Below are positions 10,287 to 42,538 of a stretch of DNA of 64,000 nucleotides, piece by piece. Within the stretch, counting starts at the first letter, position 1. The number at the start of each line of letters is the position of its first letter. Below the pieces are notes generated by a model. The model made no database searches, was not told the origin of the DNA, and saw only the letters and a program-made list of their open reading frames with translations. Source of the stretch: Trichoplax adhaerens (Eukaryota; Animalia; Placozoa); the NCBI RefSeq assembly GCF_000150275.1, contig NW_002060943.1, positions 1,028,731 through 1,092,730 on the forward strand, written 5' to 3'. Made by a program: the position numbers and the translations under genes.

Positions 10287-11126
10287 TTACTGGGATTTAT
10301 CGCGTTTGTCCAGTAGGCGCTTCACTTCATCTAGTGGAGCCTTGCCATCGAATGAACTAGGATGGCGATAAGATTTACCAAGTTTATCCCACAAGGTGAA
10401 AAATTGACCATAATTATAATCAAAGTAAACGTGATGATCAGTATGATGGGCAGAGCCATTGACGACCGATCGAAGTAATGCCGGTACACGACAATGGCCA
10501 TCGTGGATAGAGACGGTCCAAATATTGACGAAAACAAAGAGACCTAAGTAGGTCAACTTATGCAAAGGGAAAAGAAAGGGATAAATGTGATAGGGTAAAC
10601 TTTGCATGAAACCATCGATCGGATGGAAAGCATGGCTAGCAAATGGCGAGGCAATCTTCCATTTATGATGTGGTTTATGGATATACTTATAAACATAACG
10701 TGTATGCAAGAAACGATGAATCCAATAAATGCCCATATCAGTAAATAAGAGAAAGGATACCATGCTAAAGATTGCAAAACCAATTCCTCCATACAAATTG
10801 ATATCGTCATACAATTGTGAATAACCGCGTACTTCCAATAAGAAAGCGACTACTGTTAAAAACGACATGATCGGTATCGCTTCCAGTGAAGTTTTAATCT
10901 CTAAGCGCACTTGATCTTTCAAGAAATGAGGATGCTTTTCAAGATCATGATCGAAGACCATCCAGTAATTCAAGGTGGCGGTGAGATAATACAAAAGGCC
11001 ACCGCCAATGGTGGTGATAAGGTATAGCGAGATTGCTTGACGAACAATCCAATCTTCAGACCAATGGCTAGGGTAGATATACGGTGTTAGAAAGTATTGA
11101 TCACAAAAATCCAATACCAAATCCAT
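10287..11126 (-). CDS. SC5D: Lathosterol oxidase / sterol C5-desaturase (ERG3 family), single-exon CDS, 279 aa
   Basis: N-terminus MDLVLDFCDQYFLTPYIYP; His boxes YWIHRFLH, HKPHHKW and HHTDHH; PFASHAFHPIDGFMQSLPYH; YNYGQFFTLWD; several hydrophobic segments. Confidence 0.96.
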   Translation of the reverse strand: MDLVLDFCDQYFLTPYIYPSHWSEDWIVRQAISLYLITTIGGGLLYYLTATLNYWMVFDHDLEKHPHFLKDQVRLEIKTSLEAIPIMSFLTVVAFLLEVRGYSQLYDDINLYGGIGFAIFSMVSFLLFTDMGIYWIHRFLHTRYVYKYIHKPHHKWKIASPFASHAFHPIDGFMQSLPYHIYPFLFPLHKLTYLGLFVFVNIWTVSIHDGHCRVPALLRSVVNGSAHHTDHHVYFDYNYGQFFTLWDKLGKSYRHPSSFDGKAPLDEVKRLLDKRDKSQ

Positions 11127-16699: not shown

Positions 16700-16740
16700 A
16701 TCCAATCATGGCAATTAACGTCACGGTTACCATGGCGAAC
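16700..16740 (+). promoter_or_regulatory. Candidate proximal promoter of the giant receptor gene: CCAAT box and RFX X-box-like motif
   Basis: ccaatca at 16702-16708, aacgtcac at 16717-16724 and GTTACCATGGCGAA at 16726-16739 (close to the X-box consensus GTTNCCATGGNAAC). It lies ~540 bp upstream of the ATG. Possible 5'UTR intron donors follow at ~16815 and ~16849. Confidence 0.45.
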
Positions 16741-17275: not shown

Positions 17276-20200
17276 ATGGAAACGAAGAAATCCTTACTTG
17301 GTTTTTTCCTTTTACTTATTTTTCTACCCAATTTGACAAAAGGTAAGCGTATAACTAGAGTGTAGAAGAAATGGATTATTGCTGTTACGATATTACGATG
17401 ACCTATTTTTTAATAGCGATGCTATTTTGCGTTCAATTTTACTGCAGTGAATAGGAATGCTGCATTATCAGTGCTTGATGATACGTTTCCTCATACAATA
17501 CGTTAAACTTGTTCTTTTAATCAGTGATCTATTTAACTTACTTATCTAACTAGTTGGTCCATCTAGTCATGCGTTTTATAGAACTTTCCAGCATTAACGG
17601 AGTTATTTCCTCTTACAATTCTTAGAATACTCGTACTTTCGACAGTGCAATCTTTTTTCAAGCCTCTGCTATTTAGTGTAATAATCAGATTATCTACCTA
17701 CTTGTCAATTCGTTATAGAAAATTTTACGTAACGAATAGATATTATCCGCTAAGAAATAATTTATCAAACTTAAACGCCTATTGTAATTTGAAATTATTT
17801 GCTACCGTACAAATGCAAGTTATCCATTTCCATTCATTATAATCTTGAATAATCTTACATTTTTTTACTTGTACTGGCTGAAGAGATGTATTTTTTACCT
17901 TTCTAAGTTGTAATATGAACGCTACTAATTTTATTTTTATAGCCGCTTGTGTTTGCGATGTTGATTGTAATGGGCCAGGAAATGCTACTACATGTGGCAT
18001 TGGTCACTTCATGACACCGGCAGGATCATGTTATGAATGCAACCCCGGTTACTAGTAAGTAGTAATGAAGATTCTAGTTTGGTTAGAATATTAATTGACA
18101 AATATTTATGGTCAAAGGAGACAACTTGAAAGTTCTATTAACAACTCAAATAAATAAAACATAATCTACTAAGTTTTATAATGTTATAGAACAGTTAAAA
18201 AATTAATACCACCATGTGATTTTCTTTCCTTTCATGCAGTTGTACTGGAGGAACTGCTGCTCCACAATTGTGCTCATCAGGAACATATAATAACAAGACA
18301 AAACAAGACAGTTCAAGCTCATGCTTGGTAAGTAAAAGCTAACTTGTAAGCATATCTCTTATTCTTTTACGGTGAAACATACATTAATAAATATATACTA
18401 CACATTTTAATATATCAATATTTACACGACTTACGTTGACCATATCACTTCTTGATCATTAATACCATCTTGCATCATTTTTTCAGCTATGTCCTACTGG
18501 ATATAAATGCCCTAATGTTGACCGAAACCCTGAGTTGTGTACTGCAGGTACATATAATAATAAAACCGGTCAAATTAGTTGCACGACATGTCCACCCGGC
18601 TATAAATGTACCGATCCTGCCGATGCTCCTGTTGCTTGCGGAACGGGCTACTACAGTGAAGGTAACACAGCTTACTGTACACCGTGTCCAAGTGGAAAAT
18701 CATGCTCTATCCAAACAACATCCACTCCAAGTCAATGCTTAGCTGGTACATACGCTGCCAATGGCAGTGCATCATGTAGCGCTTGCACAAAAGGTCATGA
18801 ATGTCCTAACAACGAAATGTCACAACCAACTGCTTGTCAAGATGGCAATTATCAACCATCGACCGGTCAATCAGCTTGCATACCTTGCCCTGCTGGTTAT
18901 CACTGTACCGATAAAACTGTAGCAATGGCTTGCACAGCTGGACAATACAGTACCAATGGCAATATGACTTGTTTTACATGTCCAACTGGAACCTATAGTA
19001 CATCAGCCGCTGGTTCTTGCACTGCATGTCCAGCCGGTAAAGAGTGCTCTAATCCAGCTTTACCCCAAAATTGCGCATCAGGAACATACTCCCTTGGAGG
19101 TGCAACATCATGTACAACATGTCCAAATGGTCAGATCGCATTTAATAATCACACTGGTTGCCTAAATTGTGCACCTGGCTACGAATGTCCAACGCCGGGA
19201 GGAATTCAACAACCATGTCCATCAGGAACATATTCAAATGGCGGTGCTGTTAGCTGTACGATTTGTCCGGCTGGTCAATTCTGTTTTGATCCTAAAATTT
19301 CACCGCAAGGTTGTGCTGCAGGAACTTATTCGACGTCTGGTTCCACTAACTGTACAAAATGTCCAGCTGGTGCTACTTGTAGTAACACCGGTATATCAGG
19401 ATATTGTAATTCTGGTGAATACAGTTTAGAAAGTGCAAGTAGTTGTCAAACTTGTCCTGCAGGTTCTTATTGTCCAACTAAAACAGATGCACCTATCCCA
19501 TGCCCAGCTAAAACTTATTCGACAGCAGGTAAAACGTCATGTACTTCCCTTAATGCTAATGAGTATTTGCTAGGTGGTAGTCCAACTGCAACACCATCAT
19601 TGTGTCAATCGGGCTCAGTAGTATCGGATGATGCTACTAGTTGTCTACCGTGTTCATTGGGTTTTATGTGTCCTAATCCAAGTCAGAAACCTATTCCATG
19701 CCCACCGGGTTATTACCAAAATCAAGTCAATCAAACAAGCTGTATTGTCTGTCCTGCGGCGAAAGCATGTCCTGATAGAAGCACAATACCTCAAGATTGT
19801 CCAGACGGTACATATAGCGAAGGAGGAAGCACAATATGCCATGTTTGTCCACCTGGTAGAGTTTGTGTTGATAAAGGAAACTTTAGCAAAGCTATAATAT
19901 GTACACCAGGAACTTACGCACTTGCTCAAGCGACTGGTGCTTCTTGCACGGCTTGTAGTGCCGGTTCATACTGTCCTAGAACTACCGACAACACTGAACT
20001 TGCGTGTCCTCCAGGTACTTATTCATTAGGTAACCAAGCAAATTGTACTGTATGCCCTGCAGGTAAAGCTTGTCCTAACCCAGATGGCTCAGGAATTGTC
20101 GATTGTCAAGCAGGAGAGTACAGTGAAGATGGAGCATCAGCTTGTACGCAATGTCCTGCTGGTACCATGTGCTTATCCATTAATGGTACTAATAACTTTG

Positions 20201-23200
20201 CATGTCCAAGTGGATTTTATGCATTAGCTGGAGCAACAAGCTGTATACCATGTCCACCAGGATATTACTGCCCATATACTGATCAAGATCAAGTACTTCC
20301 ATGTACACCTGGTCATTACTCACACGGCAATGCAACTGAATGTACGTTATGTCCATCTGGTTATGCATGTCCAGACACAGCTGTTTCCGTTACAAATAAC
20401 ACAATTTTCAAATGTCCTGAAGGACAATATTCACTCGGCGGTCAAACAGAATGTAGCCTATGTCCAGCAGGTAGTAAATGTCCATCTATTTATAGCGGAA
20501 TCGAAACATGTCCACCTGGATTCTTTAGTCTTGGAAATTCAGTCAATTGCACAGCTTGCTATGCTGGCTGGCAATGTAACAATCCCGCAATACCTGTAGG
20601 TTGTCCACCCGGTACGTATTCTACCGGACAATCAACTGCTTGTTTACAGTGCGATCGAGGCTTTATATGCCCAGAAAAATCCAGTTCTCCAAGACCAGAA
20701 GGAACGGAATGCCCTACAGGTGGCTACTGTGACGGTCTTCGATTTTATCCTTGTCCAGCTGGTACATATCAACCATACAATCAGACGGAATCGATAAAAG
20801 AATGCGTTACTTGTCCTGAAGGTTATTATTGCGAAGGCCCTGGTGATAGTAGTTACAGTACAGTCTGTCCAATTGGTTACTTCTGTCCTCCTGGTACAAC
20901 ATTTGCCCACCGATTTCCGTGCCCAGGTGGCAAGTTTGGAAATGAAACACAACAAACCACTGAAACTGCAGCATGCCATGCATGTCCTGAAGGATATTTC
21001 TGTCCTGAAGGTGCTACTGGAGGTACGATATGTCCAGCAGGCTACTACTGTCCAGGTGGTAGTTTTGTCGGAACTCAATATGCTTGTCCAGTAGGAACGT
21101 ATAGCAATACAACTGGATTAAGCGATCCATCAGTATGTATTACTTGTCCAACTGGTCATTATTGTCCCGGTGGAGTGAATAGCAAACCATCAACAGCACC
21201 AGTTGCATGCCCACCAGGAACATTTAATCCAGATAATGGCACAGGACATCTTATCAATTGCTTGCCTTGCCCGCCAGGATATGCTTGTATTAATTCAGGT
21301 CAAACAACCTATTATTTAACTTGCATTGAAGGCCATTATTGTCCAAATGGTACAATTGCACAAAATCAATATCCTTGCATGCCTGGTACTTACTCCGGAA
21401 AGACCAATTTAACGGCAGCTTCAGAATGCGATATCTGTCCTGAAAGGTATTTCTGTGGATGGGGAACAACGGGTACAATAGGAAGTGCAACAGGTCCAAA
21501 ACCATGTCGAGCTGGCTATTACTGTCCATTAGGAACTCCGTTGCCTGATTCATTCCCATGCAATGAAGGAACTTACAATCCGTATTATAACTTATCCACT
21601 GCAAATGAATGCTTACAATGTCCAGAAGGCAGTTACTGTATTGGTGGACAAGCAAGTCCAACTGGGTTATGTTCACCTGGATTCTATTGCCCTAACGGTA
21701 CCAAATATGTCGAGCAGTATGCCTGTCCAAATGGTACCTACAACGGTGACTACGGAGCAAAATCAGTCGCTGATTGTAACGATTGTACTCAAGGTCACTA
21801 TTGTGAAAGAGCTGCTATTAAGCCAGAAGAGTGTTGGGAAGGATACTATATGCCTTATGGTGTTAATGCAACAGGTTACTTAATTGGTACAGCAGCAAAA
21901 GGATCCTCCGATTGTATACCATGTCCAAGTGGTTATCGATGCCCAAATGCTACTATCGATCCAATCTCTTGCGGAATATCGTATTATTCAGAAAATGGAA
22001 CTTCCATCTGCTTAGCATGTAAGCGAGGCCATTATTGTGATGATACTCAAACAACCGAATCTAATATGTTAACGAATAAAAAGTGTCCAGCTGGTAAACT
22101 ATGCGGTATTGGATTAAGCTCTGTTTCACAAGCAACCAATTGTAGCATAGGTTATTATTGTCCAGAAGCAACATTAGAAGAAATCCCATGTCCGGTAGGA
22201 ACTTATAATCCCGACAAAGGAGGAAGTAGTCTTGCTAGTTGTTTACCTTGTCCGGCAGGATATTATTGCTTAGCAGCCTCCTCAACAACAACTGGTCTTT
22301 GCGATCCTGGATATTTTTGCCCTACAAATATATCGAATACTCATCTCGGTATCCTTATTGGTTCTTATGGTCCCAAGCAAGAACCATGCCCTCCAAGGAC
22401 ACATTCACTTACATACGGTGGAAAAACTGCAGATGATTGTCCAGGCTGTCCAGGTGGATATTATTGTGAACCTGGTACTAATAACCCAGTAGAATGTCCA
22501 AAAGGTTATTATTGCAAACCAGGGTCAGATAAGCCAGATCCATGTCCTCTGGGAAGTTATGGTAATACCACCCTTCTTGTTTATTCTGAAAATTGTACAC
22601 GCTGCGACCCAGGTTGGTTCTGCGATACCCGTGGATTAATGACACCTACAGGCAAATGTGATGCTGGTTATGTTTGTTACCGTGGAGCTACTACATCAAC
22701 ACCCACTGATGGAGTAACAGGAGAAATATGTCCAACTGGTGGCTACTGTATCACAGGTACTGGAAGTCCATTGCCTTGTCCACCTGGTACCTTCAGCAAT
22801 GTCTCTGGAGCTGTCGATCAATCTGGTTGTACTGCATGCACACCTGGATATTATTGCTCACAAACAAGTCGACCAGAGCCAACTGGACCATGCGATGGTG
22901 GATTCTACTGTAATGGAAGCGCTGTTGTTTCAAAACAACACATAACAGATCCTGGACATTACGCACCAGCTGGATCTGCTGGACAATATCAGTGTCCAGC
23001 AGGTACCTACATGCCACTGCATAATGCATCTATTTGTTGGAGTTGTAAAGCTGGATACTTTTGTCCGGTGGTCGGAATGACAGAACCTATCACTTGTCCA
23101 GCAGGTGCATATTGCCCAACAGGAACTTTTGAACCCAAAGATTGTCCAGCTGGTACATTTTCAAACACTACTCATCTAACCAGTCAGTCAGAATGTATTA

Positions 23201-26200
23201 CCTGCTTCAGAGGTCAGTATTGTCATACAGGTGGTTTGACTGAGCCAAGTGGATACTGTGATGCAGGTTATGTTTGCAATGCCGGAGCTCGTTCACCAGA
23301 TCCCGCCTATGTTAGTGGACAAGTTGAATATGGTGATTTATGTCCTGCAGGTCATTATTGTGAGTCGGGTGCATTATATGCTGTGCCTTGTCCACTCGGT
23401 ACTTACCTTGAAATACGCGGTAAAGGCTCTAAATCCGATTGTAGATCGTGCCCACCAGGTTATTACTGCGCCCCAGAAGGACAAGTAAATGCAACTGGCC
23501 TTTGCAATGAAGGTTATTACTGTATAGCCAATGCTACCTCTGCTACACCTACTGACAAAGTAACTGGAGATATCTGTCCTATTGGACATTACTGCATTGC
23601 TGGATCCACAACCTTTAAAGTATGCGAGGCTGGAACTTATGCGAATAGTACAGGACAAGCAATTTGCGATGACTGCCCGATAGGTTATAAATGTCCTTAT
23701 GGAACAGCTCAACCTGAAATATGTCCAAAAGGATTCGCTTGCGCTGCAAAAACTGGTAGTACACCAGATGAATGCAACTTCGGAACGTTTAGCAATGTCA
23801 CAGGATTATCCTCTATTACCCAATGTCAATCATGTCCAGCTGGATACTATTGTGCAACGAAAGGATTAGCTGCACCAACTGGTAAATGTACTGCCGGCTT
23901 TTATTGTCTACCAGGTTCGAGAACAGCACAACCAAAAGATATCAGCGAAGGGACAGGTGGACCCTGTCCTAAAGGAAATTACTGTCCAGAAGGTAGCGCA
24001 GCTCCCGTACCATGCCCACCAGGACGTTATAGTGGAGCTGATCACTTGACAGCAGAAACCGATTGTTTTGTATGCCCTGCAGGATCCTACTGTGATGGAA
24101 GTGATCCTACCAAAGTTACTGGAGCATGTAGTGATGGCTATTATTGCAATGCTGGATCAGGCAGTACAACACCCAATAGAACTGATTGGGGCGCAATATG
24201 TCCGACTGGTTCTAAATGTACTAATGGATTCAGACAAGATTGTCCTTCTGGTACTTATCAAAACACGACTGGAAAGACAACTTGTGTTGACTGTCCAGCA
24301 GGATTTTATTGCCTCCAAGGTAGTAATGAACCTGTAACATGCCCTGCTGGTTATTGGTGTGGTCTTAAAACTACGACAGTGAATGAAAATCCATGTCCTA
24401 TTGGCACTTATAATAATATTACTGGAACAATATCAGTAGCAGCTTGTCTTGCTTGCACTCCTGGCTACTATTGTGATCTTCCAGGACAAACCTATCCAAA
24501 AGATCAATGCGATGGCGGATGGTATTGTAGTAGTGGTGCAACGGTTGCTAGACCAACTGTAGCATCAGAAGGTGGTCAATGTAGATCGGGTTATTACTGT
24601 CCAAAAGGAAGCACAGCAGAAATACCTTGTACAGCTGGCATGTATTGTAGTAGTGTTGGATTAGTAGCTCCTGAAGGCAACTGTTCAGCAGGTTATTATT
24701 GTACATTACAGGCTAACACACCAGCGCCAAGTAGTGTTGTCCAAGGTGGCAATATCTGTCCAATGGGTAAATATTGCCCACTTGGTAGTGTTGCTGGGTT
24801 AGATTGTCCAATAGGTCGATTTGGCAATACAACCGGCAATACAGCTATAACCGACTGCCATCTTTGTTCACATGGACATTATTGTGCAACACCTGGCTTA
24901 ACAAAACCAAGCGGCTCATGTAATCCTGGCTATTATTGCCCTCCAAGTCAAACATCACCATCACCTTCAAGTTACATTTGCCCGGCAGGTAGTTATTGTA
25001 TCTCTGGAAGTACTGAACCAGTTAATTGTCCTTCTGGCTATTATCAAGATGAAATAGGCCAAGGAAGTTGTAAAGTCTGCTGGGAAGGGTATTTCTGCGA
25101 TAACTCTCACGTTATCGGTAAATTTGTATATGGAAATAGTTCATGCCCTGCTGGTCATTATTGCCCTAATGGTACCAAATTCGCTGTACAATATCCTTGT
25201 CCAGTTGGTACTTATAGTGATAAAGAAAACTTAATTGAAGTCAGTCAATGTCAACCTTGCCCAGCTGGATATTACTGTCCTGTACCCGGTGCTACTAATT
25301 ATACCCTGAAGTGTAGTGGTGGTTACTTTTGTAAATCTGGAGCCAAAACTGCAACACCAACACAAGGCTCAGATGCTGATGTCTGTCCTGCAGGATTTTA
25401 CTGTCCTGAAGGCGCAATGCAACCAAAACAATGTCCACTTGGTACCTATAGCCCAACCACTGGAATCACTGCGGAAAGCGATTGCCTCAATTGTACAATA
25501 GGCAATTATTGTGGTGAATTAAATCTCACAAGTCCTAGCGGTAAATGTCAGGCCGGCTACTATTGCCCGTGGAAGTCAGATAGATTTGATATGCAAGCAT
25601 GTCCTGTTGGACATTATTGCCCTGAAGGGACATTGGAACCGGTAAAATGTCCATCCGGAACTTTCTCCAATACTACTATACTGAAAACAAGTAATGATTG
25701 TACAGTATGTACACCTGGTTACTATTGTGGCTCGACTGGACTTACACAGCCAACCGGTAAATGCAATGCTGGCTATTACTGCCCTGCTGGATCTAATACT
25801 TCACAACCTTCCGCCTACACTTGCCCAATTGGTGCTTTCTGTCTTGAAGGCAGCGCTAATCCAACATATTGTGCCAACTCAACATGGCAAAATACTACCA
25901 AATCATCTAGTTGTAATACCTGTGAAGCTGGATATTACTGCATAGAAAGTCATCAACCTCGCTCTTGCCCTGAAGGCTACTATTGTCCCGCTGGTACAGG
26001 AAACGACTGGAAATCATGTCCACGTGGTACTTATAGTTCTATTTCGGGATTGCATGATATCTCTCAATGTAAGCCGTGCGATGCAGGCAAATATTGCAAT
26101 CAGGAGCATGCAACAGCACCTACAGGCGATTGTTATGCCGGTTATTACTGTTCATCCGGCTCAGATAGGCCAAATCCAAGTGGTGACAACATAACAACAA

Positions 26201-32200: not shown

Positions 32201-35200
32201 TATGCCCAATTGGTAAATATTGCTTACAAGGAAGTATCGCGCCAATTGATTGCCCACCAGGATCCATTCGCCCTGTAGTAGGTGCATCAAGTACGGCCGA
32301 TTGTTGGCCTTGTCCTGCTGGTCGTTACTGTGCCAGTGCAGGTGCCATAGCTGCAACTGGAACTTGCTCAGAAGGCTACTACTGCCCTGCAGAAGCTGTC
32401 ATTCAAGTACCAACACCTAGTGCTTATATTTGTCCACGCGGATTCTACTGCGGTAATGGTACTATTACGCCAGCTGGGTGCGCACCAGGTACATATCAGC
32501 CTCTGCAAGGTAAAACAAGTTGCGATCCATGCCCTATCGGAAATTATTGTCCCTCAAATTCATCATCGCCTATCTCTTGTGCAGCCCATTCATATTGTCC
32601 GGTAGGCTCAGGTCAGCCGACATTCTGTCCAAATGGAACTTATACAACGTCAGATGTTCGAGGATTAACAAACCCCTCTCAATGTATACCATGTATTAAT
32701 GGATCTTTCTGTCAATTTGGAAAGATAATTGGCTTCTGTAATCCAGGTTATTGGTGTAAGACTGGCTCGCCAACACCTACACCCGATAGTAGCTATCCAG
32801 TTACCATTGGACAGAAATGCCCAGTTGGTAGTTATTGTCCAGCAGGAACTACACTTCCAATCAAGTGTAACGACGGTTTAGTAATCGATAAAGAAGGAGC
32901 AGTCAGTGCGGAAGATTGTACAACATGTCCAGCTGGTTATGAGTGTGACGATAAAGGAAACTTATTCTTATGCACACCTGGTTATTATTGCCCATATAAT
33001 ATAACAAAACAGCCGTGCCCAATTAGGACATTTTCACCTGATGCTGGAGCTAAAAGCATGACGACTTGCAGATCTTGTGATCCTGGATATCTTTGTACGG
33101 ATCTGGCCATGACCAACAGTACAATTTATCCATGTCCTCTCGGTCATTTTTGCATCGAAGGTTCCAATAAACCTGAACCATGTCCACCTGGCAGTTACCA
33201 AGACACTGGCTATGGTAAAAGTAAAGCTGATTGTCAACTATGTGATTCTGGCTACTATTGCCCATATGTAAATGGAACAGTATCAGGCATACGATGTTTG
33301 AATGGTACTCTTTGTCCTCGTGGTAGCTCTGGCCCAATTGTTTGTCCAGCAGGTTTCTATTGCCCGTTGGCTGAAGGTCAAATCCCATGTCCACCCGGAT
33401 TTTATTGTCCTACTGGTTCACCAGATCCCATTCCATGTCCACCTGGCTATTGGTGTGGTAATGGAACAATAGAATATGACAATAAAACTGTAAATGTTGG
33501 ATCTATCGTACCAATATTATGTCCATTAGGTTATAAGGATTCAGGTTTAACACCAAGAGATGCATTTAATAGAACTTGCTCTATTTGTCCAGCTGGAAGT
33601 TATGGTAATCCAAATCGTCTAACATGTGAAGATTGTCCAGCAGGTGTCGTTTGTTTAAAAGGCGCAACTTCAGGTAACCCTGGCGCTTTAGTAACACGCA
33701 CAGTTACTACCACTAATTCATATATATGTCCAAGAGGTCATTATTGCCCAATAAGAAGTTCAACACCTCTAGTATGCAAAGCAGGTTCTTATAATAACCA
33801 GACTGCAATGAAAAATGAAGCAGATTGTATCCCATGTGCAGTTGATCACTTCCAGAGCAATCCTGGACAAACTGCCTGCTTCCCATGTGGCACAGTTGCT
33901 AGGCAACCAACTACGGGTATGCCAACGTGTACTTGTAGCGGAGCAAATAAGGAATTTCAAGCTAGCGATAGGAGTTGTATATGTCAAGAAGGCTACACCG
34001 AATTACAAGGCTCCTGTGTTCGAAACGTATATGATTTCTGTGAGCCAGCAGTACAGTATCGGTCCGAAGATGGTGTTTGTCGCAATATGGATGAATGGAT
34101 TGCATTCTGCACACAAAAATGTGGTGTTACCGAATATAAAGGCGTTGTCCAATCGATGGGAACTTGTCAATGTCAGGTAGAAGATCTGGAGCAACTATGT
34201 GATACAACATGCCGAACATCGAGTAAAGCTAGTCTTCAATACGCTTGTACCAATCCTCCAACTTTACAAGTAGGTAGTGGTACATCCGGATCTCAAGAGA
34301 CAGTTAATACCAACTCTTTACCTAACGTTATCAACAGCAATGAATGGAATAATAATTGTCAAGCCAAGGATGGAACAGAAGTAAAACCAGTTTATACTGT
34401 TCAGATGCAATTAAGTGGATTTACTGGAGTCTATCAGCCAAATACTGCCGCAATTTCAAACTTACTCAATGCATCTGTCGCTCAATCTTCTACTGCTAGG
34501 AGATTGTTAGCTGTCAGCGCTAATGTGATTGCAGGTAGCTCTAGAACGATTAGAAATCCTATAGTTTGTTTACAACTTGGCGAATCACTATTATTTATTG
34601 TCTCCAATGAGTCGTATCCAGAATATGATCGCACCAATTTATTGAATAGTAACGCTGCATTCGATTATGGTGGATTCCGCGATTTAAGAGACAAAAAATT
34701 ACTGACAACAACCAATTCATCACTCTTTGCTTATCAATTTAATACTCCAGGAAGATATGTTTTCAAAGCAAGCAACAACGCTGAGCGTAAAATGTATGTT
34801 AGTGTTATGGACCAAGGTGCTGAATGTAGCGATGTTGGACCATTCTTCCCTAATACAGAGAGAATATTAGTGCAGAACGGATTCTCAATATCATCGGGAC
34901 TTTTACTACGTCCTGATTGGATTATGATTTTCACAATGTTAGGTGTTACACTTGGATTAATGTTTTTGTTGGCTGTTTTATTACTGGTCTTCAGAAAGCA
35001 CGGTTGGGCAAAACAAATGTTTGACCATCCACGATATCGAGCTATTACTCTGAAGTATAACTTTGATGATTACTCATCTAAAGGATCAACTGTTCATCCT
35101 GTTAAAAAGTATCACCGTAATCTAGAAGCTTCAGAATTGGAAGGTGCTATCCCTGAAGAAGAAATACCACCAGCTCCAGTAGTTATGGAGGAAGACGATA

Positions 35201-38200
35201 TTGTTGCAGAAGTTAAAGGAGACGAATTCTGGGATTACGATAAACAAGTTGATCTGGAAGGATTCAGCACTAATACATTGTACGAGTATTTATCTCGTCA
35301 ATCACGTGAATTGACAGCTGCAATTGGAAAACAAAAAGATGAAGCTAAATCGTTATACCAAAAAGTTCGAGCTCAAGCTGAATCATTGAAAGGTTTATGG
35401 GTAGCTAAATTGAATCTAAAAGGTAAATCTGCTTTAGCAACTGAAGATGATATGCGCAAGTATGACGCGAAAAAGAATGAACTTGAGGATGAACTAGAAC
35501 GTCGTCGAGAGCTAGGTATACGATTTAAAGGTGTTTTGGAACGACAGAATGAATTATTTGAAGACGATTTAAGAGAACGCGAGCAGCATGAAATCTCATT
35601 TGAAGCATCTTTCAGAGAAATTAATCGTTTACTCAATGATCTAATCGATAACAGAACTAGTGGATCAGATGATAATCAATACGATGAACAGCTGCAACAC
35701 AAAGTAGGAAGTCGCGTTGAGGAAATCTATGCACGATTGAAAAATGTTCATGAGAAAGAATGTGAACGCCGAGGTGTATGGTCATTAATAGATCAAGGAA
35801 CTGGAGCACTTCTTGTTTCACCAGAAACTAACGAAACACTTCCGCGTGATTACTTATTTGGTGTAGATGGAACTGTACGTGCACCAGATTTAATCATGCA
35901 GGATCCGACTACTGGCTTAATTATGGCAAACGAGGGAACACAAATGCAATTATTTGATGGTGGAATTGTACCAGTACCAAAGAACTTCTTCATACATCCA
36001 CAAACTGGTCGTGCTCTACCAATTGAAGGAAATGTTGCTTACGATCCGATATCATCTCGTCTAATCTATACAGCAGATAATTCCTCGGGTGATGCGTCGG
36101 CACTGACGGAACAATTAATTCCATATGTCCCATATCCAATTGATCCATCAACTAATGAACCAGTCGATACTAAATTGCATACACTCGAACGTAGAAGTGA
36201 TATGGTGTATCGGCTCTATGCCTGATCCAAATACTGGACTGCCAGTACCAATTGTTGGTATTACTATTCATCCGACAACAGAAACAGTCTATCCAGTTGC
36301 TGGATCGCAAATTGATCCAGTTACAAGATTACCTATTCCAATCGAGATTGGTTCTATGATGATTGATAATTCATCGAAGAAACCGGTAGCAATATTAGGT
36401 CTTCGAATTGATGATATAACTGGAGAAGTGAAACCATTAGGAGGAACTATACCCGGAGCAAGTGAAGATATTCCATTAGTACCAGGCGACAAATACATCG
36501 AACCATTATCAGGTCTAACGGTCAAAGTAACCGGTGCTAAATTATCACAGCAGACAGGAAGTGTATTGCCAAGTGGCGGTGGCTATCAATCATTACTAGA
36601 TTCAAGTGAGTTAGCATGCGAACGAAAGTTGTTAGATTGTTTGCAAAGCCTTAAAGAAGTCCTTTTAGTCAAACCCTCCGATACAGATAGTGATATACCA
36701 AATGGACACCACGAAAGGAGTATGCTAGAGACAGCCGTAAAAGAACTTCATCGTATCACTGAAAAGAATAATGGCCATTTACTACGCGCTGGTCATGATT
36801 TAACAAGACGATTAGAAAGATCAACTGCCTTAGCTCAGAATGGAGGTAGCCCTGGACATTATGAACACACAACCACCGGACAATTATTGCCCTTGCTTGT
36901 CGGTACAACTATGGTGTTGCTAGACGCAGTTTCTGGAGACGCCAACGTCAAAAGGAAAATGATATTACAGCTACAGAATTTCTGTTATGCTCGCAATTAA
37001 TTGATTCAAAAGCGAATATCGGAATTAGTAAAGTCGAGGATACGCTAGAAGATATACAAACAGCAGTAGAATCATTAACTGATGCTGCAAAACGAGAGGT
37101 ACAAAGACGCGGAGATGCGGCTCAGGATTGGACTTATCTGCCACCAGAAGTTGTTGCTATCTTAACGCAAGAAGATAGTATTGAACGTGATAGAGAAGAA
37201 TATCATCACAATTCACATGACAAATTTGCTGATACCGTGAACCGATTCTTTAAGAAAATGCAAGAAGAAGAGAGCAAATATAAAGAAAGAATGGCAGAAT
37301 TAAAAGGTGCTATGAATCCGGACGCCGAAGCGACTGTCACTCAACGCTTTAAACAAGTACAGTATAGATTACAGATTGAACTACAAGAGCAGCTATTAAT
37401 GAGATCACACCAATTGGATGAAAATATAGCTGCATTGGAATATACTCGTGCAAAGGCTGATTTATGCGCCGCCGAAGCGAAAACTTTACTGTCAGGAGCA
37501 TGCATTTTAGCTGGTGATTATGACGCAAGCATCTCGGGTGCATATGGCGACAACGTTAGCTCACCATCGTCTAACAGAGAAATAATACCGTTACTTGAAC
37601 ATCTCATTAAATTAATTGAAGAGAATGGAATTAAGCAGTATGTAACAACTAATAATATTGTCTCTGATGGTATGCAACAAATACCGCAGTCACAAGGTGG
37701 AACACTAACTATACAAAATATGCATGCTGCATCACCAATAACAGGATTCTCTCCAGCTGGCCAGAACGTCACATTAAATACTACCCTATTACCGATAATA
37801 GGACAACCAACAGGCCAACAGCAAGTAGGCACTATATCAACTGTTCCTGCTTATAATCAACAGACAAATGTCGCGGCAGTTTCTCACAGCGGTGCTGCAA
37901 TTGGTGCTACAGTAGTTAAAGGCAATGGAGTTGTAGGCTTAAGTAGTATCTCAGCAGTCAGTCAAGCTGCACCTAGTAATTTAAATAAGAAAGAAACGAA
38001 GCAAAAACTACACGAGAAACATCTTCAAGAAAGCGCTGAGCTTGAAGAAAATTTACGTGCTAATGAAATATTCGTTATTAATCAAGTTCTTAGCGAATGT
38101 AACAAGAAGAAAGAGGAAGCTATCGCTAAAATTAAGGAAGAATTGCGTGATGCACTTAAGAGTGCTTCAACAGATGAAGAGCGTCAACAGATCATTGAGG

Positions 38201-41200
38201 AACATGCTAAAAAGATTGAAAAGATCAATAATGCACATGAAAAAGAAAAGCAAGAACGACTCAAGAAAATACGTAAAGAACTTAGCGATATAAGAATACG
38301 CCGTAAGAAGGAACTACAACAGCGTCATCGCAACGAAGCTATAATAGCAGGCGTCGATGGCATTGAAACCGAAATACCAAGTGAGTCAGAAGCTGATCAT
38401 GATTTACTCTCGTTAGCTAAACAACAAGAAGAATTACTTGCCGAATTAAGACGAGCATATGCTGAAGAATTAGCTGCAGACATGGAAGCAAATAGTGCAG
38501 AGAATAGGAGAAAATTAGATGAAGAAATGGAAGCACGTATGAGAGCATTAAATGGTTCACGCAGTGGTGATATTGATGGAGCATTAAAGAATGCTACCGA
38601 TTATACAATAGCTGCCAATAATCGTAACAAGAATATGCGAGATCGCATGCAAAATCGCAAAGATAGAAGGAAAAATCGACAAAAGGGAACTATTGACATA
38701 GATGATGAAAAATTATTAGAGGGTAATAATGAAGAAGTAGAAAAAATAAAACAAATTTCCAACTTGCAAGAAGACGCTGATCGTCTTTATGAAGAAGCGG
38801 CATTAATGCAAGTTGTAGCTGAAGTTGAATACGAAGGTCAAACTGAAAATTACGAAAAAGTAGCTCAGCAAGTACTACAAGATCCAAGCTTCAATGATGT
38901 TGTAGATGATGACAAAGCTTTGATTGTCGAAGATATTATGTCAGAATTAGCAACAAAGAAACAGCAACAAGTTGACGAAGCAAATGGACACATGGAATTG
39001 ATTGAGGCCAAGAATGAATCGATCAAGAAACAGAAAGAATGTGAATTGACCGCCGAAGCAGTTAAGAAGCAGACTGAGCTATCAACTCGAGCAATGATTG
39101 AGCTTAATAATGTTGAAACTGCAACAGCTGTCAAGAAAATTACTGCTGTTAAACCTGATAAGAAAGTTATAGAAATTGAGGCAGAATTGAAAGAAAAGCA
39201 TTTAGAAGATCAAATTAAATTGCGATTGGAACACCGAGAAGAAATGGCTGAAATTGAACGTCAAGCGCAAGAGGAACAAAATAAGGCATTAGAAGAAATT
39301 GTAGAAGGAATGGCAGCTAAATTAGAAGAAGAAGATGTCGAATTCCAGAAGAAAGCAGCCGAAGCTAAGGAGAAATTAAGCGCAGAAGAATTCCAAAAAA
39401 TGCTTGATGACCATGAGAAAGAATTGGAAAGTATGCAACAAAATCAAGAGATAGAAATTGCTAAACATCGTGATCAATTGAATAGCAAATTGGAAGAACG
39501 CCGTCGACGTAAACAACAACAACTTGCAAGGAAACAGGAAATTGAAATGCAAAAGAAACTACTACAACAGCAAGCTGAAGCTGACCGATTAAATGCCGAA
39601 CGAGAAGCGAAAAAGGAGGATGCAGCATTGGCTGAGACAATTAAAGAACTTAAAAATAGCGATAACGAGAATGAAAGTAAGCGTGCTGAAAACTTAATCT
39701 ATCATGTTATGCAACAGCGTCATGCTAAAGAAACATTACAACATGAAGAACAACTCAAGAAAGAACTAGCGACTGCTTTAGCAGAAGCTCAGAATAACGT
39801 TGCGACTAAATGTCAAGATAATCGTGACAAATTAGTTGAACAACATGAACATCAATTAGCAGAATTATTGGCTCACTCAGATGGAATAAGTCCACTAGAG
39901 TTGAAATCACGTCAACGTGCTCTAGAAGGGAAGCAACAGACTCAGTTAGCTGAGTTCGATAAGGATGCTGCGACTAAAATGCAAGAGGCAGCCAAAGATG
40001 TAATGTTTAACTTGCAAATTCAACATGCTAATGCTAGATTGGCCTTGAAAACGAAGCAACTAGCTGAATTATCGAGTTCGATGCAAGAATTAGCTGGCCA
40101 GCGAGAATTAATTGCCGAGTATACTGATAGGACCAATGAAGCTACTCGTACTGCGCAACAGGATCGAGAAAAAATTATGAAAGAAATGGAAGCAAAATTA
40201 GAGAAGATTAAGGCTGAAAAAAGGAAAGCACAAGAGAAACAGCGAGCTGAATTGGCTCAACAATTGGAAGCACTACAAGATGAATTGCAACTTGAACAAA
40301 GCAAAGATGAACAATATCTAGAAGAGCAGATAGCGGAGAGAGAGAAGGTTCATGAAGAGCAACGTAAAAAGAAAGATGAACTAATGAAATCGAAGATAGA
40401 AAAGGAGGACTTGAATGAAGATGAAAAACAGAAACTCATCGAACAGCATCAGAGAGATCTTGCAGAATTGGAAATTGCACAGCAACGCGAAAGAGAAAAG
40501 AGCCGAGGTGCCTTGAAAAGAAAATTGGAAGAGCGTCGTAAGAAAAAGTATCAAGCAGCCGTTAATCAATTGGAAAAAATCACCGAAGATGATGAGGAAG
40601 CAACTGAAGAAGAGGAACGAGCACAAATTCGAGCAATACAACAAGACAATATTCAGAAACTAGAAACCACTGCTAGCAAACTTGAAACTCCCAATGCTCC
40701 AATTCATGAACCACAAACTGTTGACTTAGCTGAAGTTGTCCAGCCGGATGGCATCGTTACTGCCGATAGTCATGTACCAACAGCAGCAGCTGCTGGATTA
40801 ATTAGACCTAACGATGTTTACAACTATACTGAAAGGGACTGGATGGCTTTACTGACGGCATCCCCAGTCTTCCAACAGATCTGCCAAATTGAGAATATGC
40901 TAAGCAATGGTGGTACTTTCGGACCAGATAACAAAATATTGGGTGCAGGCTCAAGTGGTAGTTATATCGATTCTAAAGATGCTCAATGGATTTGTAAAGG
41001 AGATTTAATCCCGGTTGATATCAATCACTTAAGTCCAAGCCACTTTGTTATTTATCGATTTGGCTTGTTCGTAGTTAAAATGTTGAGACAATGCGCTAAA
41101 TTCCCTGAAGTTACTATGTTGGTTGCGTCCAACTTACCTTCGCACAAATATGATCGTAACGCCTTCCGTAATTCTTACCATTACGATAGGAAGCGCAACA

Positions 41201-42538
41201 TCTTATTTATAAGGAATGAGAGATTGGAATCAGTCGGCGATTTTATCGTTGTTATCATGCATGCTTTAGCTCATGTCAAAGTTGGAGATTTAGCTAATGA
41301 CGGCAATCCAGATTTCTTACGAGAATTTTATAAGGTTAGAAAAGTAGAAAGATCATTGATGGCATTACTGTCAATAGAATGATTAACTGTTATTTTTCTA
41401 TCGATTCTTATTAATAAAGTCGTTGATTGAGCTAGATAATTTATTACAGGAAGGCTACAAAATTTACGATAGAGCAATAATACGCGTTAGTCAACTTGTA
41501 CTATGAAAATAATTCCTTGCGTTTATTATTAAATAGGCTATGAAGGTTTGTTGTCAAGATTTCTTCTTTTCAAGATCAAAGAAGAGCGATATCTCAAGCA
41601 AATTAGTGAAATCAACTGATACCGAACCATTGCAAGCTATCTTTAGACATGCCAAGACCAATAAGCAACAGATTAATATTTTTGAAGAATTAGTTGAGAC
41701 TAAAGTAGCTGGACCGAACGAACTTGATCTCAATGAAGTAAGTATTGCTATACATTCACATATGTCGAAAATACTGTATAAAAATACTCCTCTATCTTAG
41801 TTATTAAAATGATGAATAAATGATATTACATTAATAACAGTCGATCTATACTCGTACAGACATCATTTACTGATTATAATTAAGTAAGAATATAATTCTA
41901 AAACTTTCTGAAACTCTTAACAGGGACTTGAACGACATATGGCTCGATTCCAAAAGTATATGGATACCGTAGAATTGCGTAACTATTTGTTAGCACAAAA
42001 AGCCCAGAAAGAAAGCAAATACGATCAAGAGGATACTATCGAAACTAAATTGGCCACCTTACGAGGAGAAAAGAAAGCATCCCTTCAGCCAACGTAAGTT
42101 TATTGTCGAAAAGTTTTCTTAGCATCATTTCATTTTTAGCAAATGTTTATTAAAGCGTTAGTTAAAAAAGTAATAAATCATTTTTAATCTTATTGTTACT
42201 TACATATAATGTTTAGGCCTAAAGTGCAAGCTGGTATACTTCGCGGTGGATATAAAAGCGTGAAAGATATCATGAATTCGCAAATAACTCATTTACGGGG
42301 AAAATCTGATCAATACAATGCCGAATTAGTCCAATTACTGAAAGCTGAATCAGAGTTAGCTGCAGCAATTAAGAACTTAGAGCAGAGCAGCGATGAAGAT
42401 GATTCTAGCAATAACTTACAACGAGCCAAACAGCAATACAGCACTGTGAGCATGCAAAAGCGAGAGGTATTGAATAATTTGACACAATGTGAGCAAGATA
42501 TCAGGAAGAAACAAAAGCAATGCGAGCAAGCATCCTAA
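17276..42538 (+). CDS. Giant Cys-rich (GCC2/GCC3, ephrin-receptor-like repeat) type-I membrane protein with coiled-coil cytoplasmic tail, ~7,900 aa, two frameshifts in this sequence
   Basis: Exons: 17276-17342 (signal peptide METKKSLLGFFLLLIFLPNLTK; alternative in-frame ATG at 17267), 17943-18054, 18240-18327, 18487-41334, 41537-41737, 41924-42093, 42217-42538. All junctions are GT-AG and phase-compatible. Exon 4 contains ORFs 18535-36225, 36125-37000 and the frame of 37237-41382 (open from ~36900), joined by frameshifts at ~36210 and ~36915. Hundreds of CPxGxYC motifs and one TM helix. Confidence 0.85.
18487..34250 (+). other. Cys-rich repeat ectodomain (CPxGxY/F/HC, GCC2/GCC3-type) of the giant protein
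   Basis: Continuous C-P-x-G-x-[YFH]-C / C-x-x-C-x-x-G repeats over ~5,250 codons, with many N-x-S/T sequons. Confidence 0.92.
34918..34992 (+). other. Single transmembrane helix of the giant protein
   Basis: WIMIFTMLGVTLGLMFLLAVLLLVF followed by basic RKH (stop-transfer). Confidence 0.9.
37980..40690 (+). other. Long E/K/Q/R-rich coiled-coil region of the cytoplasmic tail
   Basis: About 900 aa of charged, helix-forming, almost Pro-free sequence, e.g. KLEERRRRKQQQLARKQEIEMQKKLLQQQAEADRL. Confidence 0.85.

What the first reader, a model, noticed from the sequence alone, without database searches (positions are those of the whole stretch)
17276..42538. Uncharacterised ~7,900-aa receptor-like giant: Cys-repeat rod, TM, DPxTG repeats, coiled coil and dead zincin; candidate ciliary or surface sensor
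Seen in sequence: the separate ORFs join into one gene with a spliced signal peptide, ~5,300 aa of GCC2/GCC3-type repeats, a non-repeat juxtamembrane module, one TM helix and a ~2,350-aa cytoplasmic tail. Established: GCC2/GCC3 (ephrin-receptor-like) repeat membrane proteins are best studied in protists, such as the apicomplexan and ciliate cysteine repeat modular proteins (CRMPs) that trigger secretory-organelle discharge. I know of no functional characterisation of an animal protein with this whole architecture. Inference: a very long extracellular filament coupled to an intracellular coiled-coil scaffold could act as a mechanosensor, contact sensor or ciliary appendage. The upstream X-box-like motif fits a ciliary role.
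Basis: partly seen in the sequence, partly recalled or inferred. Interest (0 to 1): 0.85.

Follow-up and report, generated by a model that had tools for sequence, protein, structure and literature searches.

The report
Giant ancient orphan surface receptor gene
This placozoan gene really does encode one roughly 8,000-residue membrane protein, with a long cysteine-knotted outer rod and a long inner tail ending in a protease-like domain that lacks its catalytic residue. It belongs to an unnamed, unstudied family that runs from flagellate protists to mice.

Summary
Window 17276-42538 (+) is one seven-exon gene, Trichoplax adhaerens TRIADDRAFT_51343. The two internal frame changes are not introns. 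All four sequencing runs carry 2 extra bases after 36210 and 289 extra bases at 36915|36916. The true central exon is therefore one open ~23.1-kb frame and the protein has ~8,032 residues, so the public 7,662-residue model is wrong.

- **Architecture:** signal peptide, ~5,300 residues of Ephrin_rec_like (GCC2/GCC3) repeats, a cupredoxin-like juxtamembrane domain without copper ligands, one membrane helix and a ~2,440-residue tail. The tail holds DPxTG hairpin repeats, a ~900-residue charged helical stretch and a zincin-fold domain with H-[C/A]-L-A-H in place of HExxH.
- **Family:** the juxtamembrane domain, tail and C-terminal domain are collinear in kinetoplastids, diplonemids, heteroloboseans, ancyromonads, Diphylleia, ichthyosporeans, invertebrates and vertebrates (mouse-lineage "predicted gene 32742", fish si:dkey-103g5.4). 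The non-repeat parts match no Pfam family or solved structure, and no functional paper was found.
- **Function:** most likely a non-enzymatic transmembrane tether or contact sensor.
- **Ciliary role:** unproven. The X-box-like site has one mismatch, and only 2 of 13 genuine Trichoplax ciliary genes have such a site within 600 bases.

It is not a CRMP.

The parts
16726..16739 (.). X-box-like site (minus strand TTCGCCATGGTAAC), about 550 bases upstream of the ATG
   Evidence: One mismatch to GTNRCCNNRGYAAC. 3.06 such sites are expected per window by chance. The real-sequence background is 0.037 per kb, and only 2 of 13 ciliary genes have a site within 600 bases. Whether it belongs to the gene is unproven.
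17276..17342 (+). Exon 1: start codon and signal peptide (METKKSLLGFFLLLIFLPNLTK)
   Evidence: Matches the N-terminus of the public model P0001. The donor is AAG|gtaagc.
17943..18054 (+). Exon 2: first Cys-rich module
   Evidence: tblastn of P0001 residues 20-59, with ag|..|gtaagt borders.
18240..18327 (+). Exon 3: Cys-rich module
   Evidence: In frame with exons 2 and 4, with ag|..|gtaagt borders.
18487..41334 (+). Exon 4: giant coding exon. It is 22,848 bases as assembled and about 23,139 in the reads.
   Evidence: There are no stops in any of the three frame pieces. RNA contigs run through both frame breaks.
18487..34272 (+). Extracellular rod of Ephrin_rec_like (GCC2/GCC3) Cys repeats
   Evidence: Pfam PF07699 scores above its cut-off. 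Cys is 10.5%, with 567 Cys and 222 CxxGx[YFW] motifs. There are 113 N-x-S/T sequons, 300-residue chunks are only 35-52% identical, and there is no DNA tandem repeat.
34273..34911 (+). Juxtamembrane extracellular module with a cupredoxin-like fold and no copper ligands
   Evidence: AlphaFold model pLDDT 81.5. Best matches are pseudoazurin 1pmy (Z 8.8, rmsd 2.6 A, 96 aligned) and plastocyanin (Z 8.2); nearly all of the top 45 rows are cupredoxins. It is conserved in 33 family members.
34918..34992 (+). Single transmembrane helix (WIMIFTMLGVTLGLMFLLAVLLLVF), followed by RKHGW
   Evidence: It is the only segment with a 19-residue Kyte-Doolittle mean above 1.5 (maximum 2.77).
34993..35880 (+). Conserved membrane-proximal cytoplasmic segment and first short coiled coil
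   Evidence: The family consensus holds FR..GW...P.YR...Y.SKGS.V and E.WDY..QVDLE.F. Identity to the Owenia and Lingula proteins is 47-48%.
35890..36915 (+). DPxTG-type short hairpin repeats (continuing into the 289 bases missing from the assembly), followed from about 36660 by a non-repeat helical stretch
   Evidence: Eight [DHNE]P.[TSN][GNRES] motifs, and ten in the Owenia protein. No Pfam or PDB match.
36210..36211 (+). Assembly defect 1: two bases (GG) missing
   Evidence: All four runs put GG behind 36210. With them the protein reads SDMVYGGSMPDPNTGL, the same length as in the Owenia and Lingula proteins.
36915..36916 (+). Assembly defect 2: 289 bases missing
   Evidence: All four runs have 289 letters between these two bases. 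The Owenia protein has about 91 conserved residues exactly here.
37975..40690 (+). Long charged helical (coiled-coil or single-helix) region, about 900 residues
   Evidence: Composition is E 17.5, K 11.5, R 6.6, Q 9.2, P 0.8 and G 1.5%, with proline- and glycine-free runs of up to 191 residues.
40987..41334 (+). Zincin-fold C-terminal domain. HALAH lies at 41260-41274 and the conserved Asp at 41299-41301.
   Evidence: Model pLDDT 87.6. Best matches are abylysin 4jiu (Z 8.0, rmsd 1.9 A, 80 aligned), Wss1 (7.5), selecase, SPRTN, YbeY and aminopeptidase N. None of 40 sequences has Glu after the first His. There are 564 representative clusters in the protein library.
41537..41737 (+). Exon 5
   Evidence: The GT..AG joint 41334/41537 is seen in RNA contigs of X12, X4 and X6. 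The exon aligns with the Owenia and Lingula proteins.
41924..42093 (+). Exon 6
   Evidence: The GT..AG joint 41737/41924 is seen in three runs.
42217..42538 (+). Exon 7: terminal coiled coil and TAA stop. An AATAAA signal lies at 42833.
   Evidence: The loose ends behind 42094 read CCTAAAGTGCAAGC..., which equals 42218 onward. The exon aligns with the C-termini of the Owenia and Lingula proteins.

Best explanation
This is a single expressed gene for a ~8,032-residue type I membrane protein. It belongs to an old, unnamed eukaryotic family.

The family's fixed core is a cupredoxin-like domain sitting on the membrane, one membrane helix, a conserved tail with DPxTG hairpin repeats and long coiled coil, and a zincin-fold domain near the C-terminus. 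That domain keeps two His and an Asp but never has the catalytic Glu. The cysteine-knotted repeat rod outside the cell varies greatly in length, from about 450 residues in mammals to about 5,560 here.

I read the protein as a non-enzymatic transmembrane tether or contact sensor. A stiff, glycosylated rod (by my own scaling from TNFR-type and furin-type modules, about a quarter of a micrometre) reaches out from the cell surface. Force or contact at the rod is passed through the single helix to a ~130-nm helical tail. The Glu-less zincin domain at the end of the tail docks, as a peptide-binding or metal-binding module, onto a conserved cortical or cytoskeletal partner.

Shown here: the gene structure, transcription, topology signals, folds and family range. 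Inferred: rod stiffness and length, the docking role of the zincin domain, and the mechanical function. Whether the protein sits on cilia or on the general cell surface is open.
For: One gene and expression:
- RNA contigs of up to 12.3 kb and 19.7 kb tile the region. They cross both frame breaks and show three GT..AG joints.
- 2 + 289 = 291 bases restores a single frame.

Topology:
- There is a signal peptide and a single hydrophobic helix. All Cys and 113 sequons lie before it, and the charged Cys-poor tail lies after it.

Folds:
- Cupredoxin-like, Z 8.8 and 8.2.
- Zincin, Z 8.0 to 7.0, with an almost pure list of zincins.

No catalysis expected:
- The position after the first His is C in 24, A in 10 and never E in 40 sequences. 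H157 is present in 39 of 40, H161 in 40 of 40 and D170 in 39 of 40.

Family:
- The juxtamembrane module and C-terminal domain co-occur and are collinear from Fabomonas, Diplonema, Cryptobia, Percolomonas, Diphylleia and Chromosphaera to fish, frog, reptiles and mammals.
- The domain tree follows the species groups.
- Ectodomain length ranges from ~450 to ~5,560 residues while the tail is conserved.
Against: - There is no localisation, partner or phenotype for any family member.
- The rod length and stiffness are my scaling, not a model of this protein.
- The DPxTG region and the coiled coil were not folded.
- A metal site with H, H and D, plus Cys in most members, could still support some chemistry.
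- Structural Z scores near 8 are at the level where the tool warns that a match may be only a common arrangement. The case rests on the consistency of the match lists and on the HxxxH helix.
- No human entry appeared among the 71 listed relatives of the warthog protein. If that reflects a true loss, it argues against an indispensable role.
Confidence: 0.5

Rival explanations
1. It is specifically a ciliary or flagellar membrane protein. In this reading it is a long appendage or adhesin of the ciliary membrane, tied by its tail to the axoneme or to intraflagellar transport, and used for gliding, substrate walking or ciliary mechanosensation.
For: - An X-box-like site lies 550 bases upstream of the ATG. 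The chance of one within 600 bases is about 2%, and two ciliary genes (BBS2 and a CFAP20-like gene) carry one at -490 and -511.
- All named hosts are flagellated or ciliated at some stage, and several are surface-gliding flagellates (the biology is from my own knowledge).
- Orthologues of the paralogue TriadG55968 are expressed in Hydra neuron and nematocyte trajectories (PMC10580291, Table S3D).
Against: - The site has one mismatch.
- The mouse-lineage orthologue matches no chain by sequence in the PDB sequence set searched.
- I did not find a human orthologue.
- The paralogue is listed as a marker of peptidergic progenitors, not of the ciliated epithelium.
- Absence from non-ciliated lineages was not testable here.
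Confidence: 0.25
2. It is mainly a protective or spacing surface coat. In this reading the cysteine-knotted, heavily glycosylated rod is the functional part, forming a protease-resistant glycocalyx pillar like protist surface antigens. The tail serves only anchoring, sorting or turnover.
For: - The ectodomain has 5,475 residues in the giant exon with 113 sequons and 567 Cys.
- Rod length varies widely between lineages.
- Transcript contigs are deep in whole-animal RNA runs.
Against: - The most conserved parts are the juxtamembrane domain and the 2,400-residue tail, not the rod.
- Vertebrate members keep the tail with only ~450 residues outside the cell.
- A coat protein has no need for a ~900-residue coiled coil and a conserved globular end.
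Confidence: 0.12
3. It is a CRMP-like trigger of regulated secretion. In this reading the repeat rod senses a target and the protein licenses discharge of a secretory organelle, as apicomplexan and ciliate CRMPs do.
For: - It shares the Ephrin_rec_like / GCC2-GCC3 repeat type.
- CRMPs trigger rhoptry discharge (bioRxiv 10.1101/2022.02.24.481622).
- The paralogue is a marker of the peptidergic (secretory) lineage.
Against: - The CRMP core is two EGF-like domains plus nine membrane helices. This protein has one helix and an unrelated tail.
- Nothing in the non-repeat parts points to CRMPs.
Confidence: 0.06
4. The C-terminal domain is an active, non-canonical metallo- or thiol-dependent hydrolase, and the protein signals by cleaving itself or a substrate in the cytoplasm.
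For: - It has a zincin fold with invariant or near-invariant His, His and Asp, and Cys next to the first His in 24 of 40 sequences.
- NAFRNS and other cleft-like motifs are strongly conserved.
Against: - The general-base Glu of HExxH is absent in all 40 sequences.
- There is no match to any Pfam peptidase family in 40 members.
- No peptidase chemistry is known to me for an H-C/A-x-x-H zincin.
Confidence: 0.08
5. The frame breaks are real, so this is a broken gene or several separate genes.
For: The assembled window has three frame pieces, and the public model needed two extra introns and stops early.
Against: - All four runs, from four studies and under two organism labels, carry the missing 2 and 289 bases.
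- Homologues align straight through both sites.
- Contigs bridge the sites.
Confidence: 0.02

Closest known systems
Uncharacterised orthologues: mouse-lineage 'predicted gene 32742', rat RGD1562811, fish si:dkey-103g5.4, Owenia and Lingula predicted proteins, Trichoplax TRIADDRAFT_55968
   Same: The same collinear core is present: juxtamembrane module, one membrane helix, conserved proximal tail, DPxTG region and C-terminal zincin-like domain.
   Different: - Their ectodomains are much shorter (~450 residues in mammals, ~1,800 in Owenia and Lingula).
- None has a known function.
- The window gene groups with amphioxus, Lingula and Owenia, while the paralogue groups with a crinoid protein.
Apicomplexan and ciliate cysteine repeat modular proteins (CRMPA/B, CRMP1-4)
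   Same: Both are giant surface proteins with ephrin-receptor-like (GCC2/GCC3) cysteine repeats.
   Different: CRMPs have a core of two EGF-like domains and nine membrane helices and act in rhoptry discharge. This protein has one helix, a cupredoxin-like module and a 2,440-residue tail.
Minimal zincins and relatives (abylysin, jannalysin and selecase minigluzincins; Wss1/SPRTN; YbeY)
   Same: The predicted C-terminal domain has the same fold: sheet, HxxxH helix and following helix (Z 8.0-7.0).
   Different: - No Glu follows the first His in any of 40 family sequences.
- There is no sequence-level match to any peptidase family.
- The domain sits at the end of a membrane-anchored coiled coil.
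Cupredoxins (pseudoazurin, plastocyanin) and the ephrin ectodomain
   Same: The juxtamembrane module has the same Greek-key sandwich fold (Z 8.8 for pseudoazurin, 4.5 for ephrin-A1).
   Different: There is no conserved His, Cys, His, Met copper set. The two conserved Cys (positions 99 and 185) look like a disulfide. There is no sequence similarity.
Giant single-pass adhesion or sensor proteins with cytoskeleton-linked tails (Chlamydomonas FMG-1B, usherin, ADGRV1; from my own knowledge)
   Same: The general design is shared: a very long extracellular filament, one or a few membrane passes and an inside link to a scaffold. Several of them act on cilia or stereocilia.
   Different: The domains are unrelated, and those proteins have short tails. 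This is an analogy only and was not tested here.

Membership tests
Ephrin_rec_like / GCC2_GCC3 repeat proteins (Pfam PF07699) | Pfam model match above the gathering score | tested here: met
   30.8 and 26.9 bits against a cut-off of 23.1, with 7 and 3 stretches in the two halves.
Ephrin_rec_like / GCC2_GCC3 repeat proteins (Pfam PF07699) | Regular Cys pattern (CxxGxY ... CxxCPxG) held throughout the array | tested here: met
   567 Cys and 222 CxxGx[YFW] motifs, with modal spacings of 16-20 residues.
Cysteine repeat modular proteins (CRMP) | Conserved core of two EGF-like domains plus a multi-pass (nine-helix) membrane region | tested here: not met
   There is one hydrophobic helix only. The core definition is from bioRxiv 10.1101/2022.02.24.481622.
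Zincin metallopeptidases | Zincin fold (mixed sheet, active-site helix, following helix) | tested here: met
   VIA-align gives Z 8.0 (4jiu), 7.5 (5xbn), 7.3 (4jix, 4qhf) and 7.0 (5ln5, 6mdx). Foldseek's top rows are the same families.
Zincin metallopeptidases | HExxH with the catalytic glutamate | tested here: not met
   The window has HALAH at 41260-41274. The position is C, A, I, T, S or G, and never E, in 40 sequences.
Zincin metallopeptidases | Third metal ligand on or after the active-site helix | tested here: inconclusive
   D170 is conserved in 39 of 40 sequences, nine residues after the second His.
Cupredoxins | Cupredoxin Greek-key fold | tested here: met
   1pmy scores Z 8.8 and 7zqe_M scores Z 8.2. 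Foldseek probabilities are 0.99-1.00 for plastocyanins and pseudoazurins.
Cupredoxins | Type 1 copper ligands (His, Cys, His, Met) | tested here: not met
   The near-invariant positions of the module are P96, C99, P116, Y118, N125, F130, D131, L138, G160, C185 and G203. No His or Met is among them.
RFX / X-box ciliary regulon | X-box close to the promoter, above background | tested here: inconclusive
   There is a one-mismatch site at -550. The background is 0.037 per kb, so about 2% for 600 bases. Only 2 of 13 Trichoplax ciliary genes have one within 600 bases.
Unnamed family (predicted gene 32742 / si:dkey-103g5.4 / TRIADDRAFT_51343) | Collinear juxtamembrane module, single membrane helix, DPxTG region and C-terminal H-x-x-x-H domain | tested here: met
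   - blastp of the module hits 33 members just before their membrane helix.
- tblastn of mouse-lineage, bat, fish, Fabomonas and Diplonema proteins is collinear on the window.
- The domain HMM hits all 24 chosen members.

The most novel reading that the evidence does not exclude
The family would be an ancestral eukaryotic mechanical linker of the flagellar or ciliary membrane. A variable-length extracellular rod would grip or sense the substrate. A catalytically silent, metal-binding zincin domain at the end of a ~130-nm coiled coil would dock it to the axoneme or to transport machinery. This would explain its presence in gliding flagellates and in an animal that walks on its cilia.
Probability: 0.2. 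Interest if true: 0.85.

Novelty: new variant of a known kind. Interest (0 to 1): 0.62.

Why it matters
A receptor-like protein family that seems to go back to early eukaryotes, is kept in rodents and fish, and has neither a name, a Pfam entry for its core, a structure nor a phenotype is a clear gap in cell biology. The work here defines its fixed core (cupredoxin-like module, one helix, DPxTG tail, Glu-less zincin domain) and so gives handles for testing it in mouse, zebrafish and Trichoplax.

It also corrects a reference gene model. Two omissions in the Trichoplax assembly (2 and 289 bases) hide a single ~23-kb coding exon and about 370 residues of the protein.

Tried and rejected
- **Pfam on the non-repeat pieces:** at E up to 10 only noise came back.
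- **PDB sequence searches:** the C-terminal domain (single sequence and profile), both DPxTG pieces and the mouse-lineage orthologue gave nothing.
- **ESM Atlas:** the C-terminal domain's nearest clusters are unnamed 'hypothetical' sets partly labelled viral. The DPxTG piece gave no usable hit.
- **Literature:** there were no hits for the gene identifiers. Gm32742 and RGD1562811 appear only in expression tables. The GCC2/GCC3 literature is about CRMPs, Eph receptors and others, not this architecture. One broad search was uninformative.
- **Single-cell data:** the Najle et al. supplement holds the paralogue but not this gene in the stored, truncated text. The 2018 atlas paper is not held.
- **Tandem repeat search:** none found at DNA level.
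- **Flanking open frames:** no Pfam domains within ~6 kb on either side.
- **Rejected readings:** pseudogene or several genes; CRMP membership; copper protein.
- **Not run:** Complex prediction, because I make no binding claim.
- **Not done by rule:** Every search used single exons or frame pieces by reference. Joining was done only inside scripts, to check frame and length and to read the C-terminal end. The 289 missing letters were not shown to me and are left out.

Full report
**Origin of the window.** The window is contig C1414:1028731-1092730 of a 105.6-Mb, 1,414-contig assembly. The region encodes Trichoplax adhaerens TRIADDRAFT_51343, a 7,662-residue predicted protein (P0001).

**Checking the observation.**
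- Stop-to-stop frames on the plus strand are 18463-36222 (5,920 codons), 36119-36997, 36865-41379, 41537-41797 and 42188-42535. Minus-strand ORFs inside the region are all shorter than 150 residues.
- Cys stays at about 21 per 200 residues for ~5,300 residues, then falls to near zero.
- There are 567 Cys and 222 CxxGx[YFW] motifs with spacings of 16-20 residues.
- Pfam finds only Ephrin_rec_like (PF07699), above its cut-off in both halves.
- One hydrophobic helix lies at 34918-34992 and nowhere else.
- The start codon at 17276 opens a typical signal peptide. Exons 1-3 (17276-17342, 17943-18054, 18240-18327) join exon 4 at 18487 with GT..AG borders and in frame.

**The frame breaks are assembly defects.** I laid contigs of four public runs on 36150-42149. 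X12 is RNA by its record. X4 and X6 show spliced forms. X1 keeps the introns and is probably DNA.
- All four runs carry GG after 36210 and 289 extra letters between 36915 and 36916. The sum, 291 bases, keeps one frame from 18487 to 41334.
- With GG the protein reads SDMVYGGSMPDPNTGL, matching the length of the Owenia and Lingula proteins at that point.
- At the second site the Owenia protein has about 91 conserved residues, with further DPxTG units, between GTTMV and VARRSYW.
- The public model bridges both sites with invented introns that remove conserved residues. It also reads into the intron after 41334 and so stops at 41379.
- Three real introns (41335-41536, 41738-41923, 42094-42216) are spliced in X12, X4 and X6. 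The last three exons align with the C-termini of the Owenia and Lingula proteins.
- As assembled, the seven exons hold 7,935 codons. With the 97 missing codons the protein has ~8,032 residues, and exon 4 is a ~23.1-kb coding exon.
- Contigs break only at single variant bases, and pieces of 12.3 kb and 19.7 kb exist.
- I did not see the 289 letters, so I infer that they are open from their length and from homology.
All searches were by exon or frame piece. Joining was done only inside scripts, for frame and length checks.

**Anatomy.**
- Extracellular part (about 5,566 residues): repeat chunks are only 35-52% identical and there is no DNA tandem repeat, so the array is old. It carries 113 N-x-S/T sequons.
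- Juxtamembrane module (34273-34911): it folds with pLDDT 81.5 into a cupredoxin-like sandwich. Best matches are pseudoazurin (Z 8.8, rmsd 2.6 A, 96 aligned) and plastocyanin (Z 8.2), and nearly all of the top 45 rows are cupredoxins. Its conserved residues include two Cys but no copper ligand set.
- Tail (about 2,441 residues), in order:
  - a conserved proximal segment;
  - a short coiled coil;
  - DPxTG-type hairpin repeats with no Pfam or PDB match;
  - a Q/T/G-rich stretch;
  - about 900 residues of E/K/R/Q-rich, nearly proline-free helix;
  - a globular domain;
  - a final coiled coil.
- Globular domain: it folds with pLDDT 87.6. It matches minimal zincins, Wss1/SPRTN, YbeY and aminopeptidase catalytic subdomains (Z 8.0-5.0). 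Its helix carries HALAH (41260-41274).
- In 40 family sequences the motif is H-[C/A]-L-A-H...D. Both His and the Asp are essentially invariant, and Glu never appears. No member matches a Pfam peptidase family.
Z near 8 is a moderate score, and a metal site may persist.

**Family.**
- A full HMMER scan with the C-terminal domain found 564 representative clusters, 51 of them below 1e-30.
- The long hits share the whole plan: N-terminal hydrophobic signal in the complete ones, Cys-rich first part, one helix, Cys-poor tail and the domain near the end.
- The juxtamembrane module lies just before the helix in 33 of them.
- Named members come from these groups:
  - Discoba: Cryptobia, Diplonema and Percolomonas.
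  - Other protists: Fabomonas, Diphylleia and Chromosphaera.
  - Invertebrates: Owenia, Lingula, a crinoid, a sea cucumber and amphioxus.
  - Non-mammalian vertebrates: teleosts (si:dkey-103g5.4), lungfish, frog, turtle and lizard.
  - Mammals: many species (predicted gene 32742, RGD1562811).
- A tree of the domain separates Discoba (90/91). It gives three animal clades: the window gene with amphioxus, Lingula and Owenia (96/95); the Trichoplax paralogue with the crinoid (100/99); and vertebrates (100/99). Inheritance looks vertical.
- The genome holds two members. The other has a 6,128-codon open frame.
- Ectodomain length runs from ~450 residues (bat, with signal peptide) to ~5,560 residues here.

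**Function.** Nothing is published. Three things are conserved: the membrane-adjacent module, the tail and the Glu-less zincin domain. The rod, by contrast, varies freely in length. The most economical reading is therefore a non-enzymatic transmembrane tether or contact sensor. Its rod acts as a spacer or antenna, and the end of its tail docks on a conserved intracellular partner. The rod length (~0.25 micrometre) and tail reach (~130 nm) are my own scaling, not measurements.

**The ciliary idea.**
- The X-box-like site (16726-16739) has one mismatch, and 3.06 such sites are expected per window by chance.
- To calibrate the motif I located 13 Trichoplax ciliary genes and scanned 2.5-3 kb upstream of their first detectable exon. 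These were IFT57, IFT20, IFT81, BBS5, BBS2, three B9 genes, CFAP20, a CFAP20-like gene, PACRG, CLUAP1 and BBS1.
- Those regions hold four sites in 36.7 kb (0.11 per kb). The background is 8 sites in 177 kb of arbitrary genome, or 0.037 per kb when pooled with the window.
- Only BBS2 (-490) and the CFAP20-like gene (-511) have a site within 600 bases.
- A site at -550 is therefore unlikely by chance (about 2%), but the motif marks few ciliary genes here. For five of the 13 genes the first exon was not found.
- The paralogue, not this gene, is listed as a peptidergic-progenitor marker, with Hydra orthologues in neuron and nematocyte trajectories (PMC10580291).
- I put the cilium-specific reading at about 0.25.

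**Comparison with known systems.**
- The protein meets the Ephrin_rec_like repeat definition.
- It fails CRMP membership, which needs a nine-helix core.
- It has the zincin and cupredoxin folds without their catalytic or copper residues.
- It is a clear member of an unnamed family.

I rate it as a new variant of a known kind, namely giant single-pass surface proteins, with interest 0.62.

Noticed in passing
window 36210/36211 and 36915/36916: The reference assembly lacks 2 and 289 bases that all four runs carry. The public model TRIADDRAFT_51343 compensates with two invented introns (about 36088-36193 and 36902-36969) and ends early at 41379, so it misses three exons.
   Followed up: yes
window 38131, 38269, 40266, 40280, 40454: At these positions all four runs read another base than the window (A>G, A>G, G>A, A>G, G>A). 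These are either private alleles of the sequenced clone or base errors in the assembly.
   Followed up: no
G000:C1411 around 6795122 (L002): The only paralogue in the genome (TRIADDRAFT_55968) has a 6,128-codon open frame. It groups with a crinoid protein rather than with the window gene, so the duplication predates the split of placozoans and bilaterians.
   Followed up: partly
window 18487-34272: The best internal matches of 300-residue rod chunks are offset by about five chunks (chunk 5 with 14, 6 with 11, 7 with 12, 8 with 13). This hints at an old duplication of a ~1,500-residue block.
   Followed up: no
window 40792-41334: In the ESM Atlas the nearest clusters to the C-terminal domain (scores 0.96-0.97) are unnamed sets whose few taxon records are mostly 'Viruses, Uroviricota'. 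They are probably short eukaryotic fragments filed wrongly in metagenomes.
   Followed up: no
window 10287-11126 (-), 1624-1917 (-), 59923-60812 (+): The neighbouring coding pieces are a fatty acid hydroxylase ORF (279 residues, E 6e-25), an ATP_bind_1 (GPN-type) exon, and two immunoglobulin-domain exons downstream. None has an evident link to the giant gene.
   Followed up: partly
L012 (G000:C1413:6515009-6518009): A CFAP20-like gene has a near-perfect palindromic X-box (TTTACCATGGTAAC) 511 bases upstream of its first detected exon. Its right half is the same as in the site upstream of the giant gene.
   Followed up: partly
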